This document shows positions 3,831 to 49,960 of a stretch of DNA of 64,000 nucleotides, in pieces. The position numbers were made by a program, and so were the translations under genes. Position 1 is the first letter of the stretch, and each line of letters opens with the position of its first letter. Where the stretch lies: positions 2,318,555-2,382,554 of the forward strand of contig NC_068991.1 in NCBI RefSeq assembly GCF_001194135.2, in the 5' to 3' direction. A model generated the notes under the pieces. It ran no database searches. It was given only the letters and a program-made list of their open reading frames with translations, and had not been told where the DNA came from. The stretch comes from Octopus bimaculoides. Its lineage: Eukaryota.

Positions 3831-4026
3831 TCTCCATGTGTAAGAGATACTCGGTCCATTTCTTCGATAACCGTGTTCGATTCATTCTCAATGACCAATG
3901 TGATATTAACGTTTTGAATTAGACCGCCGTAGGAAAATTTACAGCTGGCCAACGAGTGAAGAAACAACGGACTTACAACGAGGACACTTTCATTAGGTTT
4001 TAGACGGTGAATAATGATGATGGGTT
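3831..4026 (-). CDS. Candidate internal coding exon of an unidentified host gene (196 nt, phase 1 to phase 2)
   Basis: Acceptor ttgttattttaatttattttccag| and donor GA|GTAAGT. Only one frame is open: xPIIIIHRLKPNESVLVVSPLFLHSLASCKFSYGGLIQNVNITLVIENESNTVIEEMDRVSLTHG. Non-repetitive, with a weak MAM-like pattern (VSPLF..S...C.F.Y). No partner exon was confirmed. Confidence 0.45.
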
Positions 4027-4136
4027 CTGGAAAATAAATTAAAATAACAAATGAATCAGGGAACCAAGACAAGGTTAATAGGATATTTTACTCTTCATGA
4101 ATAATAGAAAAGAAAGAAAAGAAAAAGAAAAGAATG

Positions 4137-4298
4137 CGTGGTCAATTTCATAGGGATGTTGAAGATGAGGTAGACAGAGAAAAAAGATGGCTGGGCATGA
4201 CTAAAAGTGATTTAAAACCGGAAGCGGAAGTTCTGATCTGTGCTGCCTAAGAGCAAGCACTAAGAACAAACTCCCAAAAAATACAGAATAGACAACAC
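4137..4298 (+). mobile_element. R4/Dong-like LINE fragment (region before the zinc knuckle)
   Basis: Translates RGQFHRDVEDEVDREKRWLGMTKSDLKPEAEVLICAA*EQALRTN, then after a frameshift KYRIDNT. This matches the RLE-LINE motif GQF...WL..G.LK.ETE..I.AAQEQAL.TN. Confidence 0.85.
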
Positions 4299-4358
4299 AT
4301 TGCGTTACCTGCTATCTTGGATCTTCTGGATACTATGTTCCTCATACCTTTGCATATA

Positions 4359-4396
<38 letters not shown>

Positions 4397-4514
4397 TATA
4401 TATATATAAAAATTAAGGTGCTCAGAAATCTGGATGTTTGTACATTTACAGATTTTTATTAATGTCACATATTAAATAAAGCGCTTTTCACCTAATCGTT
4501 TAGGATATATACAT

Positions 4515-4805
4515 CTGGAAATATAATATGTGACAATTATTCGGTAGCCATGATAAAACTCCGAGTTTCGGATGTCGGAGCGGAAACCCACGCCGGTATC
4601 TCTTTAGTTATCGGGCCAGTTTTGTGATATGGAAAGATGGCTCATCTGGAAAAGCAGCTTAGACCCCGCCACATGCCTAAATTCATGGCATTTTTTTCGA
4701 TGGCCCGATAACTGAAGAGATGCTGGCGTGAGTTTCCGCCCGCTACATCCGTAACTCGGAGTTTTATCATGGCTACCGAATAATTGTCAGATATTATATT
4801 TCCAG
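4515..4805. mobile_element. Foldback/MITE-like element with about 104-bp inverted arms
   Basis: 4515-4618 is the reverse complement of 4701-4805 (about 8 differences), with an 82-bp spacer and CTGG...CCAG termini. No clear target-site duplication. Confidence 0.75.
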
Positions 4806-25895: not shown

Positions 25896-27285
25896 GAGAG
25901 AGAGAGTGAGAGAGAGAGAAAGAGCGAAGGAGAGAGAGAGTTAGAGAGAGACTATGAAATTCTAGCCAATCTTACTGAATAAATAATCTTCTTATCAAAT
26001 AAATCATTTTTGATTTCTGCCTGTTCAATCATATATATNNNNNNNNNNNNNNNNNNNNNNNNNNNNNNNNNNNNNNNNNNNNNNNNNNNNNNNNNNNNNN
26101 NNNNNNNNNNNNNNNNNNNNNNNNNNNNNNNNNNNNNNNNNNNNNNNNNNNNNNNNNNNNNNNNNNNNNNNNNNNNNNNNNNNNNNNNNNNNNNNNNNNN
26201 NNNNNNNNNNNNNNNNNNNNNNNNNNNNNNNNNNNNNNNNNNNNNNNNNNNNNNNNNNNNNNNNNNNNNNNNNNNNNNNNNNNNNNNNNNNNNNNNNNNN
26301 NNNNNNNNNNNNNNNNNNNNNNNNNNNNNNNNNNNNNNNNNNNNNNNNNNNNNNNNNNNNNNNNNNNNNNNNNNNNNNNNNNNNNNNNNNNNNNNNNNNN
26401 NNNNNNNNNNNNNNNNNNNNNNNNNNNNNNNNNNNNNNNNNNNNNNNNNNNNNNNNNNNNNNNNNNNNNNNNNNNNNNNNNNNNNNNNNNNNNNNNNNNN
26501 NNNNNNNNNNNNNNNNNNNACATACTGTATTATGTATTGCAATGAGAAATATATGCAATACGTCATGACACTGTGCTTCTGTAAAGTGTTGCCTTTAGGG
26601 AAGGGCAGTCGGCAGCCTTCATCAGCCGGAAAATAAATAAGCGATAATTTTCTCCTATCTCACTCACTTATAATAACGTTTCGGGTTATACTTCTAGAAA
26701 TATAGCGCATGCGCAGAAATACATGTCTCGGTACATTAGAAGTGTTTTCTATTTCAGTAAATAAGTTTCGAAGTAGTTTTTTTTTTTTTACTAACTAAAG
26801 GAAAATACCATGCTAGACTATATAGAATTAAACATAAGATTATCGAGCTCTCTCGTTAATTGCTCGCTGGAAAATCCATTGCTTTGTGTAGTTTTTAGAA
26901 CTCTCTTTCTAACCCCACCCACACACGCCAATACTCTGACACACGTACACACCTATCCACGTGAGTTTGTGCTATATAACGTGTGGATATATAACGTGTG
27001 TATATGACCGTGCGATTTGTGTTTGTGTGCGCGCTTGTATGCACGTCGTTTGACGCGAATCATAATCGCCATGAATCGTTAATGGCTGCAAAAGACTGTT
27101 TACCCTTGCATGCTGCACACACGATGTATACAAAGCGATCGCATGCATGCAGCGTTCGCCAAGACACACTCTCGTACCAGAACAACGTCGTAACAGTGAT
27201 AATGATGACGATGATGATGATGGTAATAGTAATAATAATAATAATAAAAATAATAATAATAATAATAGTAATAATAATAATAATA

Positions 27286-27345
<60 letters not shown>

Positions 27346-27539
27346 GTAATAGTAATAATAATAATAATGATAGCAACAGCGACAACAACAACAACAATAA
27401 TAATAATAATGATTTCACTTAGCAATAACCACGCCTCGGCTTTACATCATTGGCCATGTTACTGCCTTTGCGCAAAGCTGAGGCGGTACCATGGCAATAA
27501 CAGAAACAACAACAATAATGTATAGTCAGACATATATAC

Positions 27540-28300: not shown

Positions 28301-28949
28301 GTGTGAGACGACGCTCGAGTATGACTGCAGTTCTACAACCGAAACCATTAAAAGAATTAGAGGATATAATACATATATATATATTGATTCGGCTGTATGC
28401 GACTTAAAGTTTCGAGGGTGTCTTAGATTACTGAATGGCAAAACACAGGAAGTCCGAGATGACTACCAAAAAATATGCTGCTAACGGTCAAGACGGGTCA
28501 CATGGTTTTGTCAGAACAAGGTCGATTGTTCAACGACAGGAGTTCCTTTAGAAGATGGAATTTCTTTGATCGCATGACTGAATAGGGAGCTTGTGGCGCC
28601 TAAATATCTTGTGTGTGCGTGTGTGTGCGTTTAAGTGTGTGCGTGTATGTGTGTGTATGTGTGTACGTGTATGTGTGTGTATGTGTGTGTGTGTGTGTAT
28701 AAACATGTACTAAACTGAAAGGAGATTAATGAATCCAACTGAGAGCTTTGAAAACCGGGCCCTAGCATGACAGCAGTCCAATGATTCGAACGTTTAAAAT
28801 CATTAACCTCATTACTATAATTTCTTATCGTGCCCTCAATATATCCGACCGTCTCAGGAAATCTGTAAATTTCAAACTGCACTCATTGCTAGGATCATTC
28901 TTTATGAAATGAGTTTCCAGATTTGTTGTTGTATGTATGTAGCCCACCA

Positions 28950-29711
28950 GTTATCATATTTTGTTGCAATCAGTGAGTTCAGTTCATCAACATCAAAAAG
29001 CGTCATTTCAAACTATGATGACCATGTCATCTAAATCTTCATTTAACTTCTGCTTCCTAAACAATTTCTTAATTACTTTGGCAACTAAATCATCCAATAT
29101 TTCATCTATTCAACAAGCGATAATTTTATCTGAGTTTAGAGATTTTCTTGTTTTAACGTCATAAACTTTCAGAAACAATCCAGACAAAACGGCCTTTCAA
29201 CAGGCATTTATAGTTTTGTTCTTAATTTCGTGAATTGCTTTTCCAATTATTTCCCCAATGAAGAATAATGATTATTTTCTTACTTCTTCTGTAACGTTAA
29301 CTTGGTTTTCTTTCATATCAACCAGATTTTTCTTTTTAAATACGAATTGTTAACACAATTTGTCTTAAAATTATTACTAATTACGCTTTGCTATAATGAC
29401 TGGATAAGTGGGGTAGTAGAGGGCGGTAAGAACCAAATTTTACCATTATGGTGTTCTAAATCACAGGTATGTGATGGAGCGTTATCAATTAGTAACAAAA
29501 CTTTGAAGTCAATATTATTTTCTTTTATAAAAATTTCAGCTTCAGCGACACAATCTTGATAAAACCAGTTTCCCAATATGGCGGCAGTCATCCATGATCT
29601 GTTGTTTACACACCAGTGAACCGGAAGGTTATTTTTTATTCAATCCCCTCCTTGCATGTGCATTGCCCTATTAATTAATAATGGATCCCTGGAACCATCA
29701 CTTATTGGTTT
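28950..29711 (-). mobile_element. pogo/Tigger-like transposase pseudogene, 3' part (DDE_1-like domain)
   Basis: Minus strand: CCKPISDGSRDPLLINRA...KNNLPVHWCVNNRSWMTAAILGNWFYQDCVAEAEIFIKENNIDFKVLLLIDNAPSHTCDLEHHNGKIWFLPPSTTPLIQSL. This carries the Tigger motifs LPV.W...AW.T, LLL.DNAPSH and FLPP.TT.LIQP. Confidence 0.9.
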
Positions 29712-29751
29712 ACAACAAGAACAACAACAAGAACAACAACAAGAACAACAA

Positions 29752-29783
<32 letters not shown>

Positions 29784-29784
<1 letters not shown>

Positions 29785-30223
29785 TCTGCTCAGATTTGCT
29801 TGTCAGTTGTTTGACCATAACCAGTTCAGTATGTCTCTTTAGTGCCTGACGATATGTGCATTTCTGTTTACGAGCAGAAGTAGTGGGGGAGCATCATAGC
29901 CATGTGTTGAGAGGAATTCTTTGGGGTTTGAATGATTCGCCTCTAGAAACATGGGTGTTTCGTTCAACATCCCGAAACAACTCATATTCAGCGACCTTTT
30001 GTGTGGGATGTGCTACTGGACCTGAAGAAAATTCTAACTGGGCCTCACCTGCAAAGTCATGCACTGTTTATCTTGATATGAGATCACCATGTCATGCAGA
30101 TATGGTTGTGATGCATGTGCCTGGTGTATCCTTTTCAGACGGGTAGTCACGATTGCTATATTGTGTTTCATATATTTTACTGCAGTGTCACTTTGATGGC
30201 ATGCATTGCTCTCTCACTCTATC
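29784..30223 (+). mobile_element. Unclassified retroelement 3' region, family F, ending in (AAT)n
   Basis: The last about 175 bp ('cacctgcaa(a/g)gtcatgc...tatcttgatatgagatcac...cagtgtcactttgatggcatgcattgctctctcactc') is repeated at 48405-48576. Both copies end in AAT repeats. No convincing ORF. Confidence 0.75.
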
Positions 30224-30238
30224 ATAATAATAATAATG

Positions 30239-30273
<35 letters not shown>

Positions 30274-30275
<2 letters not shown>

Positions 30276-30699
30276 GGCAAATAGACCAGATATAGTTGTC
30301 AAAGATCATGAAGGAAAAAAATGCTTTCTAATTGATGTATCAATACCAGCAGATGACAACGTTTCTCGAAAAGAAATGGAAAAACTTTCAAAATACAAAG
30401 ACCTGGAAATAGAGATAACTCGAATGTGGAGTCTAAAAACAGAAACAATTCCTATCATAGTAGGTGCCTTAGGTATAATTAAAAAATACTCAGACAAATA
30501 CATAACAAAAATACCAGGACTTACAAATATATGTAACATACAGAAAATTGCACTACTGGGTACTGCACACATTCTACGCAAAACACTTTCAATACAGTAA
30601 ACATAAAAGCACCACAGCAAACCACAGCACATACCCAAGGCGCACAGAGCTGCGCTCGGTAGTGAAGTGAAAGCACGTTATAAAAATAAAACTACTGAA
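30274..30699 (+). mobile_element. 5'-truncated R4/Dong-like LINE (RLE domain and 3' UTR) between two (AAT)n tracts
   Basis: Open frame KANRPDIVVKDHEGKKCFLIDVSIPADDNVSRKEMEKLSKYKDLEIEITRMWSLKTETIPIIVGALGIIKK...GTAHILRKTLSIQ*, a PD-(D/E)xK restriction-like endonuclease (RPDI...IDV.IP...EK..KY). Confidence 0.95.
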
Positions 30700-30700
30700 C

Positions 30701-30735
<35 letters not shown>

Positions 30736-30737
<2 letters not shown>

Positions 30738-31140
30738 TGGTTTGCGCCTTTGATGCTTTGTATCGATCACCCTTTCTATTTTTCTGCTCTTGATATAAAA
30801 ACTTTCTATGGTGTATCCTTTCAGAACAGACCAGTTTCCAACAGCATCACATGTTTAAAAGAATAGAAATGTTTTTCAATTATTTCAGGTATTTGTGACG
30901 CGAATTCTTCCGCATGTTCTTATCGGTTGATCCACTTCCGTCGTGCAATTTGTTATTATGTTGTAAACTTCGACTTCAAACATGTTGCAGCCATTTCTTG
31001 CTGCCCGAAAATTCGTTAAATGTTTCATTTGTAACGTTGGGTACATTGCTGATTTTTATCGTTTGGCAATGACGCCTGTCAGAGCATTCCATGACATTCA
31101 CCTACGATACACTTTTCTTGCATTTAATTTCGTTCTATGC
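30736..31140 (-). mobile_element. pogo/Tigger-like transposase pseudogene, 5' part (CENP-B-type HTH to DETG region)
   Basis: Minus strand with stops and frameshifts: NETFNEFSGSKKWLQHV (cf. F.AS.GWL.RF), HAEEFASQIPEIIEKHFYSFKHVMLLETGLF*KDTP*KVFISRAEK (cf. DETGLFWK..P..TFIS..EK), then ASKAQTTLLL. Confidence 0.8.
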
Positions 31141-31142
31141 AT

Positions 31143-31202
31143 TATTGATCTATGTAATATTGATCTATGTAATATTGATCTATGTAATATTGATCTATGT
31201 AA
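31143..31202 (+). repeat. 15-bp minisatellite (TATTGATCTATGTAA)x4
   Basis: Four exact units are visible. Confidence 0.95.
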
Positions 31203-31434
31203 TATCATTTAATATTGATTTGTGTAAGGCTGCGAATAGGTAGACCTGTTGATCAACTTGCCTTTTCATCATTTTGTGGCCGATAAATAAAGTACTAACC
31301 AACTACTGGAATCGACCCTTTCTCACTCACCCACTTTTTCTGCTCTCTCCATTGTCTCCCTCTTTCTACACTGTCTGTATGTCTATTTCTATCACTTCTT
31401 TTCTTTTTGTGTATCTATTTGTCTCTCTCTATAC

Positions 31435-48404: not shown

Positions 48405-48576
48405 TTTACACCTGCAAGGTCATGCGCTATTTATCTTGATATGAGATCACTATATCGTGCACATGTGATGCATGTGTCTGGTGTAGCCTTATCAATCGGG
48501 TAGTCATGTTGGGTATACTGGGCGTCGTATATTTTATCCCAGTGTCACTTTGATGGCATGCATTGCTCTCTCACTC
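48405..48576 (+). mobile_element. Family F 3' end
   Basis: Similar to about 30047-30223; ends 'ctctctcactc' followed by AAT-like repeats. Confidence 0.8.
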
Positions 48577-48591
48577 AATAACAATGATAAT

Positions 48592-49068
48592 GGTTTCAAA
48601 TTTTTTCCACAAGGGCTGCTTGAGGGAGGTGGGGATAAGTCGATTACATCGACCCCAGTGGTCAAGTGGTACTTATTTTATCGACTCCGAAGGACGAAAG
48701 GCAAAGTCGACCTCGGCGGAATTTGAACTCAGAACGAAAAGACAAACGAAATGCCGCTAAGCATTTTTCCTGGCGTGTTAACGATTCCACCAGCTCGCCG
48801 CCTTAATAATAGTAATAATAATAACAATAATAATAATAATGATAATTATAATTATTATTTCAAATTTTTACCACAAAGTCAACTTGGATGAGGTGGGGAC
48901 GAGTCGATTAAATCGACTCCAATGTCAACTGGTACTTATGTTGTCGACTCCGCAAGGACGAAAAGTAAAATTGACCGCTGCAGAATTTGAACTCAGAACG
49001 TAGCGATGGGCTAAATACCGCTAGACATTTCGTCCAGTGCGCTAACGATTCTGCCAGCTCACCGCCTT
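48592..49068 (-). mobile_element. Two tandem SINE family B copies (48592-48804 and about 48858-49068) separated by (AAT)n
   Basis: Both read '...atcgac(c/t)cc...actggtactta...gtcgactccg...aggacgaaa...ggaatttgaactcagaacg...ccagctc(g/a)ccgcctt'. Confidence 0.92.
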
Positions 49069-49095
49069 GATAGTAATGACAACAACAACAACAAC

Positions 49096-49138
<43 letters not shown>

Positions 49139-49960
49139 GCAACAACAACAATAATAGTGCACACACGCTCTCCACTCACTATCTGACATAGACACTTCAC
49201 CGCAACTACGAAATATCTCATTTGATAATTAATCGGTGAATATTTTGCAAAGAATGCACTAATTTAATTTTTTTCCAACGATAACTAATTAATGAAAATT
49301 AAAATAAATAATACAAAAACAAATTAAATTGTTTATATCATCTTCATAAACCGTTTTAAAATTCTTCATATATTTCTGCAGTGAGTTAGTTTGTTTTGTT
49401 AAATTTAGTATTAATATTTTTATTATATGTATATGTATGTACACATATAGCTGCATTAATACAAATACATTCAGAAATATATACATGCGCATTTATATAT
49501 ATATATATATATNNNNNNNNNNNNNNNNNNNNNNNNNNNNNNNNNNNNNNNNNNNNNNNNNNNNNNNNNNNNNNNNNNNNNNNNNNNNNNNNNNNNNNNN
49601 NNNNNNNNNNNNNNNNNNNNNNNNNNNNNNNNNNNNNNNNNNNNNNNNNNNNNNNNNNNNNNNNNNNNNNNNNNNNNNNNNNNNNNNNNNNNNNNNNNNN
49701 NNNNNNNNNNNNNNNNNNNNNNNNNNNNNNNNNNNNNNNNNNNNNNNNNNNNNNNNNNNNNNNNNNNNNNNNNNNNNNNNNNNNNNNNNNNNNNNNNNNN
49801 NNNNNNNNNNNNNNNNNNNNNNNNNNNNNNNNNNNNNNNNNNNNNNNNNNNNNNNNNNNNNNNNNNNNNNNNNNNNNNNNNNNNNNNNNNNNNNNNNNNN
49901 NNNNNNNNNNNNNNNNNNNNNNNNNNNNNNNNNNNNNNNNNNNNNNNNNNNNNNNNNNNN

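What the first reader, a model, noticed from the sequence alone, without database searches (positions are those of the whole stretch)
28950..31140. Microsatellite apparently born from Leu/Cys codons of a dead Tigger transposase, then colonised by AAT-associated retroelements
Seen: a minus-strand pogo/Tigger transposase reads ...ASKAQTTLLL, is interrupted by about 1 kb (29712-30735), and resumes CCKPISDGSRDPLLINRA. The break falls exactly in the TTA TTA TT(G) TGT TGT codons, and the two edges are (TTA)n and (TTG/TTC)n expansions. Inside, separated by (AAT)n tracts, sit a family F element and a truncated R4/Dong-like LINE. Known: Tigger transposases have the motif KxRxTLLL(C/G)xNAxGDxKxKPLLI here, and Dong-type R4 elements target (TAA)n. 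Inference: the order was pseudogenisation, slippage of a codon run, then repeated targeted insertion. This is a layered record of one transposon creating the target site for others.
Basis: partly seen in the sequence, partly recalled or inferred. Interest (0 to 1): 0.7.

Follow-up and report, generated by a model that had tools for sequence, protein, structure and literature searches.

The report
Retroelement nest splitting a dead Tigger
A decayed pogo/Tigger transposon in an octopus-type genome is split exactly at a short run of Leu/Cys codons by AAT-repeat arrays that hold two retroelement fragments, one of them a Dong-type LINE of the kind known to home to such repeats; this is a tidy but ordinary case of nested mobile DNA.

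Summary
On the minus strand, 31056-30737 and 29717-~28852 are the two halves of one dead pogo/Tigger transposase. They align colinearly to one TIGD1-like protein (residues 111-221 and 222-513). The alignment is gap-free across the break if about 3 TTA and 2 TGT codons are kept. Both outer repeat arrays are in phase with the reading frame.

The 1,025-bp interruption reads (ACAACAAGAACA)3.3 | (AAT)11 | repeat F | (TAA)17 | LINE 3' end | (AAT)12. The LINE fragment is the C-terminal restriction-like endonuclease domain of an R2/R4-type element. Full-length relatives have RT plus a zinc knuckle plus this domain and no APE domain. Five of five copies examined (two in the window, three from other organisms) end in (TAA)n, so "Dong-like" holds. 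F is an unclassified octopus repeat.

The proposed order (slippage first, then targeted insertion) is plausible but not shown. Two inserts can supply at most two 3' tails, so at least one of the three arrays must derive from the target. Whether it expanded before or after insertion cannot be told without orthologous or paralogous copies, which the tools could not reach. (AAC)n edges also occur at other AAT arrays, so a Cys-codon origin is not required. All components are of known kinds; interest is low.

The parts
28852..29711 (-). C-terminal half of a dead pogo/Tigger transposase (DDE_1 core 29684-29316). It aligns to P0002 residues ~224-513; the alignment is weak below about 29100.
   Evidence: Pfam DDE_1 5.9e-15; tblastn 1e-22 to 1e-25; frameshift-aware alignment. 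LLLIDNAPSH is kept; the third catalytic Asp (PLDQG) is now a stop codon.
29712..29751 (.). Perfect 12-mer array (ACAACAAGAACA)3.3, which reads (TGT TGT TGT TCT)n in the transposase frame. The first 6 nt (29712-29717) are the two Cys codons expected from homologues.
   Evidence: TRF 100% matches; frame reading CCSCCCSCCCSCCKPISDG; best colinear score with 1-2 TGT kept.
29752..29784 (.). (AAT)11, pure. It reads TTA (Leu) in phase with the C-half frame. It lies upstream of F, so it cannot be the 3' tail of a plus-sense insert.
29785..30223 (+). Repeat 'F', 439 bp, unclassified and apparently octopus-specific. The plus orientation is inferred only, from a constant right end abutting (TAA)n in both copies, a left-truncated second copy, and a 96-98 codon open frame on the plus strand.
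   Evidence: Second copy 48409-48579, 82% identity; ORF; only protein hit is O. bimaculoides A0A0L8FNT1, 76% over a third of the query; no credible Rfam match.
30224..30275 (.). (TAA/ATA)17 with one G variant, lying between F and the LINE.
   Evidence: TRF
30274..30700 (+). 5'-truncated 3' end of a Dong/R4-like (RLE-type) LINE. It has an intact 108-codon ORF end (30274-30597, stop at 30598-30600) with RPD...IDVS...EKLSKYK, followed by a 100-bp 3' UTR.
   Evidence: 475 and 6,415 homologues; architecture of relatives; R2 match in PDB; (TAA)n after the 3' end in 5/5 copies.
30701..30736 (.). (AAT)12, pure. It lies 3' of the LINE and reads TTA in phase with the N-half frame (…ACC ACA TTA TTA…).
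30737..31056 (-). N-terminal part of the same transposase (P0002 residues 111-221: end of the HTH_Tnp_Tc5-like region, then ETGLF, up to KASKAQTT). It carries several frameshifts and stops. The first ~110 residues and the TIRs were not found.
   Evidence: Frameshift-aware alignment, score 85 against null 38.5 +/- 5.9; no TIRs.
19817..20700 (-). Second, longer and more decayed copy of the same LINE. Its 3' end is followed by ATAATAATAA, then a SINE-like repeat, then (AAT)16.
48409..48579 (+). Second copy of F (its 3' 177 bp). It ends at the same base and is followed by AATAACAATGATAA and a SINE-like repeat.

Best explanation
A pogo/Tigger DNA transposon copy, now only a decayed fragment, carried the family's conserved ...T-L-L-L-C-C/S-N... 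motif. In this AT-rich genome the motif was encoded as about ACA TTA TTA TTA TGT TGT, which on the other strand is a (TAA)3 proto-microsatellite next to (ACA)2. This short run became the site of an AAT/TAA array. Two plus-sense non-LTR retroelement copies that end in (TAA)n were integrated into it, presumably by target-primed reverse transcription with the (UAA)n RNA end pairing to the nicked (TTA)n strand. One is repeat F. The other is a 5'-truncated Dong/R4-like LINE with a C-terminal restriction-like endonuclease. Today's three AAT arrays (11, 17 and 12 units) are a mix of target-derived units, element-supplied tails and later slippage. The (ACAACAAGAACA)3.3 edge is a variant-unit expansion anchored on the Cys codons. 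Shown: one colinear transposase; the break inside the Leu/Cys run, in phase on both sides; the Dong-like nature and (TAA)n association of the LINE. Inferred: the seed sequence, the TPRT mechanism, F's orientation and the order of events.
For: Colinearity and the ancestral run of 4-5 codons come. Both outer arrays are in phase with the flanking reading frame, and no Tigger codon is lost. This is expected if the arrays grew from, or annealed to, the element's own TTA run. The LINE has RLE-type architecture in 8/8 long relatives, R2 homology at 4.8e-28 with the PD..D..EK..KY alignment, and (TAA)n at the 3' end of 5/5 copies. These include an Exaiptasia truncated copy flanked by (TAA)12 and (TAA)10. 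Published work reports Dong specificity for (TAA)n, including in molluscs (PMC3812793, PMC7998251), and a full-length Dong in the O. bimaculoides repeat library (PMC9115989). Counting argument: two inserts can supply at most two 3' tails, so one array of at least 11 units, against at most 3 ancestral units, must be target-derived and expanded by slippage. The Tigger is much older than the inserts. It shows 38% identity to its nearest relatives, with at least 5 stops and at least 5 frameshifts in ~280 codons, whereas the LINE ORF end is intact over 108 codons.
Against: No second copy of this Tigger family and no orthologous locus were available, so the ancestral codons (TTA rather than CTN/TTG) and array length are inferred only. 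The minimal (TAA)n length that a Dong-type element needs is unknown. F is unclassified and its orientation rests on weak evidence. Element RNAs transcribed from within arrays could carry repeats at both ends, which would weaken the counting argument. The arrays are pure, meaning they are still turning over, so present lengths say little about lengths at insertion.
Confidence: 0.72

Rival explanations
1. One reading: the TTA run first expanded by replication slippage into a sizeable (TAA)n array. Only then did site-specific elements insert into it, splitting one array into three.
For: Dong-type elements are described as specific for (TAA)n arrays (PMC3812793, PMC7998251). The Exaiptasia truncated copy sits between arrays of 12 and 10 units, just like the focal copy. 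The (AAT)11 upstream of F is not a 3' tail.
Against: No intermediate state was observed. The arrays are pure and so keep being remodelled. Nothing dates expansion relative to insertion.
Confidence: 0.45
2. Insertion first: a retroelement RNA ending in (UAA)n annealed to the unexpanded 9-10 bp TTA run. Its tail created the first long array, the second element landed in that tail, and the 5'-side array grew afterwards or came in with a read-through 5' end. The Tigger supplied only microhomology, not a microsatellite.
For: Both F and the LINE carry (TAA)n directly after a constant 3' end at independent loci. Microsatellite birth from retroelement tails is well documented (PMC3812793, PMC2887409). 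The in-phase junctions are equally expected under annealing.
Against: It leaves one array of at least 11 units without a tail to explain it. It also requires a site-specific RLE element to accept a very short target.
Confidence: 0.3
3. The (ACAACAAGAACA)n edge does not come from the Cys codons. It is the usual degenerate edge of an AAT array (AAT to AAC point changes that then expand).
For: (AAC)n of at least 3 units flanks three other AAT arrays in the window that have no Tigger (27374-27397, about 42670, 49080-49095 and 49138-49150).
Against: The array runs seamlessly and in frame into AAA CCA (K P). Homologues require 1-2 Cys/Ser codons exactly there, so at least the first ACAACA is Tigger sequence and is an adequate seed.
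Confidence: 0.35
4. The two flanks are unrelated or different Tigger fragments juxtaposed by chance or by misassembly.
For: The N-half is not detected by plain tblastn or by Pfam HTH_Tnp_Tc5. The window contains assembly gaps.
Against: The flanks share strand, order and frame phase. They match contiguous residues (221|222) of one protein, the N-half score lies about 8 SD above shuffles, and there are no Ns within 28950-31140.
Confidence: 0.03

Closest known systems
Dong (R4 clade) non-LTR retrotransposons, specific for (TAA)n (Bombyx Dong, DongAg, DongBg of the snail Biomphalaria; a Dong consensus exists in the O. bimaculoides repeat library)
   Same: C-terminal restriction-like endonuclease motif. 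Relatives have a central RT, a zinc knuckle and no APE domain. The sense strand is followed, and in truncated copies also preceded, by (TAA)n. The copy here is 5'-truncated.
   Different: Only the last 108 codons plus the 3' UTR are present. No phylogeny against reference R4, Dong or Rex6 sequences was possible, so clade membership is by architecture and target only.
pogo/Tigger (Tc1/mariner superfamily) DNA transposons; TIGD1-like proteins
   Same: DDE_1 domain, the KxRxTLLLCxNAxG...PLLI motif, and the order HTH region, then DE(T/S)GLF, then LLLIDNAPSH.
   Different: A dead fragment. About 110 N-terminal residues and the TIRs/TSD were not found. Two of the three catalytic acidic positions are lost. 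The nearest proteins are only 31-45% identical and come from a pseudoscorpion and from unnamed assemblies.
Microsatellite birth from proto-microsatellites and from retroelement tails (reviewed in PMC3812793; RTE-associated microsatellite families, PMC2887409)
   Same: A short cryptic repeat or an element tail is the seed, slippage lengthens it, and arrays and retroelements are physically linked.
   Different: Here the candidate seed is a conserved codon run of a DNA transposase. That makes a pleasing anecdote, but it is not a different mechanism.
R2 elements (solved structures 9nl3, 9dou, 9nl2, 8gh6)
   Same: RT region homologous at 4.8e-28; the RLE motif can be aligned.
   Different: R2 targets 28S rDNA, whereas this family sits in (TAA)n.

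Membership tests
pogo/Tigger transposon | DDE_1 (PF03184) catalytic domain | tested here: met
   5.9e-15, 55.7 bits against a cut-off of 22; tblastn to TIGD1-like proteins.
pogo/Tigger transposon | CENP-B/HTH_Tnp_Tc5 DNA-binding region upstream of DDE_1 | tested here: inconclusive
   No Pfam hit. The frameshift-aware alignment covers the FLASHGWFERFKIRHSL region of P0002 (FSGSKKWLQHV*SR-SL) within a significant block. The first ~110 residues are absent.
pogo/Tigger transposon | Terminal inverted repeats with TA target duplication | tested here: not met
   No credible inverted repeat brackets 28.3-32.5 kb. The copy is a decayed or truncated fragment, so this does not argue against its ancestry.
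pogo/Tigger transposon | Intact D,D,D/E triad (active enzyme) | tested here: not met
   The DE(S/T)G Asp is missing and the PLDQG Asp is a stop codon; only the LLLIDNAP Asp is kept. There are at least 5 stops and at least 5 frameshifts. The gene is dead.
Dong/R4-clade LINE | C-terminal restriction-like (PD-(D/E)xK) endonuclease, with no N-terminal APE | tested here: met
   The window peptide has RPD...IDVS...EKLSKYK. The C-terminus of P0134 aligns to the R2 RLE, though weakly. 8/8 long relatives lack Exo_endo_phos.
Dong/R4-clade LINE | Reverse transcriptase upstream in the same ORF | tested here: met
   Absent from the truncated window copy. RVT_1 at 1e-25 to 4e-33 in 8/8 full-length relatives that carry this domain at their extreme C-terminus.
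Dong/R4-clade LINE | Insertion in (TAA)n | tested here: met
   (TAA)n follows the 3' UTR in 5/5 copies. It lies on both sides of the focal and the Exaiptasia truncated copies. The sample is small and not genome-wide.
Dong/R4-clade LINE | Phylogenetic placement with reference Dong/R4/Rex6 RT sequences | not testable with these tools
   No Repbase/Dfam reference sequences were on hand.
Microsatellite born in situ from a codon run | Unexpanded run at the same position in orthologous or paralogous copies | not testable with these tools
   Only one copy in the window. No octopus DNA was reachable. The only indirect support is that homologues allow 4-5 codons there.

The most novel reading that the evidence does not exclude
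The conserved T-L-L-L-C motif of pogo/Tigger transposases, encoded by TTA runs in AT-rich cephalopod genomes, would act genome-wide as a recurrent seed for (TAA)n arrays. It would thereby create landing pads for Dong-like LINEs and their passengers. This would be a systematic 'one transposon family builds the niche of another' relationship rather than a one-off locus.
Probability: 0.08. Interest if true: 0.45.

Novelty: new member of a known kind. Interest (0 to 1): 0.2.

Why it matters
The locus illustrates how nested repeats build up, with a dead DNA transposon offering a cryptic repeat that becomes a microsatellite and retroelement nest. It also adds cephalopod evidence that Dong-type LINEs sit in (TAA)n. 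It does not change understanding of any mechanism. The practical value is for annotation. Repeat annotation of octopus genomes should treat AAT arrays as retroelement hubs, and ORFs such as 30115-30600, which spans F, the array and the LINE, are artefacts rather than genes.

Tried and rejected
- Plain tblastn and Pfam did not detect the N-half. I wrote a frameshift-aware aligner with shuffle controls to test it.
- My first excision joins were out of phase and produced an artefactual frameshift at the junction. This was corrected.
- The LINE peptile alone gave no Pfam family and no meaningful PDB match. It was classified through full-length relatives instead.
- ARAGORN found no tRNA. The Rfam hits inside the region (CrcZ, Thr leader) are low-complexity noise.
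- The inverted-repeat search found no Tigger TIRs.
- Look-ups of octopus proteins and of the window ORF on contigs failed. L001 has no 3' flank.
- Two metagenome scans, one for a degenerate Tigger pattern and one for the conserved end of F, found nothing.
- The 6-bp TGGTTT on both sides of the insert block (29706-29711 and 30738-30743) was considered as a target-site duplication. I rejected this because it would delete seven conserved residues and shift the frame; the score was 266 against 299.
- The Xiong and Eickbush 1993 Dong paper is not held.

Full report
**1. What is there**

On the plus strand the region reads as follows:
- the transposase C-half (minus sense), ending at 29711
- (ACAACAAGAACA)3.3 at 29712-29751
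- (AAT)11 at 29752-29784
- a 439-bp repeat, 'F', at 29785-30223
- (ATA/TAA)17 at 30224-30275
- a 425-bp LINE 3' end at 30274/6-30700
- (AAT)12 at 30701-30736
- the transposase N-half (minus sense), starting at 30737

No assembly gap lies inside 28950-31140, although the window has 6,705 Ns elsewhere.

**2. One Tigger, colinear across the break**

The concatenated translation hits Pfam DDE_1 at 5.9e-15. A protein search returns TIGD1-like proteins carrying DDE_1 plus HTH_Tnp_Tc5, at 31-45% identity.

Plain tblastn sees only the C-half, 29684-29316. The N-half carries several frameshifts, so I aligned it with a frameshift-tolerant dynamic programme:
- It matches P0002 residues 111-221 with a score of 85.
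- Forty shuffles give 38.5 +/- 5.9 (maximum 64).
- The opposite strand gives 37 and the reversed protein gives 34.

After excising the interruption, the two halves align to P0002 residues 111-513 as a single block with a score of 378. My first joins were one base out of phase. With in-phase joins, the score is highest when 3 TTA and 2 TGT codons are kept for P0002 (299, on a ridge at five codons). For P0005 it is highest with four codons kept. The junction then reads KAQTTLLLCCKPISDGSRDPLLINRA against KDRITILFCSNASGDYIMKPLVINKS, with no gap.

Both outer arrays are in phase with their flanking frame...ACC ACA TTA TTA... on the N side and ...TTA TTA TTT TGT TGT ... TGT TGT AAA CCA on the C side.

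The element is long dead:
- about 38% identity to its nearest relatives
- at least 5 stops and at least 5 frameshifts in about 280 codons
- two of the three catalytic acidic positions gone
- no TIRs found, and the first ~110 residues missing

**3. The LINE fragment**

The 108-codon ORF end is KANRPDIVVKDHEGKKCFLIDVSIPADDNVSRKEMEKLSKYKDLE...*. It has hundreds of short homologues across Metazoa, including O. bimaculoides A0A0L8I0U5 at 86% identity, and it has no Pfam family.

An exhaustive HMMER search finds 6,415 relatives. Eight long ones (1,021-1,204 aa) carry this domain at the extreme C-terminus, with a central RVT_1, a zf-RVT-like knuckle and no APE endonuclease.

One of them, P0134, matches solved R2 proteins at 4.8e-28. 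Its C-terminus aligns, weakly but motif for motif, with the R2 restriction-like endonuclease (PD...(I/V)DV...EK..KY). The fragment is therefore an RLE-type LINE.

Its target association is consistent in every copy examined:
- The focal copy lies between (TAA)17 and (AAT)12.
- The second window copy (20208-19817, 88% identity) is followed by ATAATAATAA, a SINE-like repeat and (AAT)16.
- An Exaiptasia truncated copy lies between (TAA)12 and (TAA)10.
- A full-length copy from a Logan assembly and one from a marine metagenome both end in (TAA)n, 100-250 bp after the stop codon.

That makes five of five copies. Published work states that Dong elements target (TAA)n in insects, molluscs and cnidarians (PMC3812793, PMC7998251). 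It also reports a full-length Dong in the O. bimaculoides repeat library (PMC9115989). 'Dong/R4-like' is therefore supported by architecture and target. A reference phylogeny could not be made.

**4. Repeat F**

F has one further partial copy in the window (48409-48579, 82% identity). That copy ends at the same base and is again followed by a degenerate TAA run. It is truncated on the left.

F has a 96-98 codon open frame on the plus strand. Its only database match is another octopus copy annotated as a 64-aa protein, and it has no credible Rfam match.

I read F as the 3' part of a plus-sense, TAA-tailed retroelement. This is inference from weak evidence.

**5. Context**

AAT/ATT arrays make up 1.9% of the non-N window, in 20 arrays. 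Several of them hold retroelement ends. (AAC)n edges occur at three other AAT arrays that have no Tigger.

**6. Mechanism and order of events**

Homologues allow only 4-5 codons at the junction. The ancestral sequence therefore had at most 3 TTA and at most 2 TGT units, against about 40 AAT-type and 13 ACA-type units today.

The in-phase boundaries, and the absence of any lost Tigger codon, show that the nest sits within the element's own TTA/TGT run. With two inserts there can be at most two 3' tails. One array of at least 11 units must therefore be target-derived and lengthened by slippage.

In the second case a tail would have annealed to the short run and later turnover would have done the rest. 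All arrays are pure and so are still being remodelled. An element RNA transcribed from within an array could also carry repeats at both ends.

The 12-mer edge is anchored on the Cys codons, but it equally resembles the ordinary degenerate AAC edges of other arrays.

**7. Verdict**

Every component belongs to a known kind: a pogo/Tigger fossil, a Dong-type (TAA)n-associated LINE, and microsatellite growth from a cryptic repeat or a retroelement tail. The locus is a neat teaching example, not a new mechanism.

Noticed in passing
window 27411-27479 (-), with arrays 27224-27410: The first ~68 nt of a U4 snRNA (Rfam RF00015, 53.9 bits) run directly into (ATT)5(GTT)5...(ATT)n on the same strand. This looks like a 3'-truncated U4 retropseudogene fused to, or tailed by, the trinucleotide array. 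The full-length Rfam coordinates (27347-27479) are padded by low-complexity sequence.
   Followed up: partly
window 19595-19810, 22237-22436, 48592-48804, 48895-49068: Four copies of a ~200-bp SINE-like repeat (AAGGCGGCGRGCTGGCAGAATCGTTAGCA...TTTGAAACCA) lie inside AAT arrays. They are always in the same orientation relative to the array. If my reading of pol III A/B-box-like motifs is right (no tool support; ARAGORN found nothing), they are opposite in sense to the Dong-like LINE. Other copies that share the head but have a different tail (3371, 12610, 17226, 42817, 61243) are not in AAT arrays.
   Followed up: partly
window 30115-30600 (+): A 161-codon ORF runs from the end of F through the (AAT)17 array (an Asn run) into the LINE ORF. 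It is a chimeric artefact that gene callers could mistake for a protein.
   Followed up: partly
window 31134-31205: A 15-mer tandem repeat, (TCTATGTAATATTGA)4.8, lies just beyond the detectable N-terminal end of the Tigger homology. It is followed by a 43-bp SINE fragment at 31253-31295. Together these may mark where the Tigger copy is truncated.
   Followed up: no
window 29706-29711 and 30738-30743: The hexamer TGGTTT lies directly outside both ends of the interruption. It also begins the SINE-like repeat where that repeat abuts TAA runs elsewhere. I judged it a coincidence rather than a target-site duplication.
   Followed up: yes
whole window: Of the 20 AAT/ATT arrays, 16 read AAT on the plus strand. 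The arrays cover 1.9% of the non-N sequence. The largest are 17933-18247 (315 bp) and 27231-27368. The window also holds 6,705 Ns (assembly gaps), several of them next to (AT)n tracts.
   Followed up: no
L002 (Exaiptasia GCA_001417965.1, LJWW01000057.1) 3942-4751: A sea-anemone copy of the same LINE family (72% amino-acid identity in the RLE domain) shows the same anatomy as the octopus copy: (TAA)12, then a truncated ORF end plus a ~90-bp UTR, then (TAA)10-11. For a LINE tail domain this is strikingly well conserved across phyla.
   Followed up: partly
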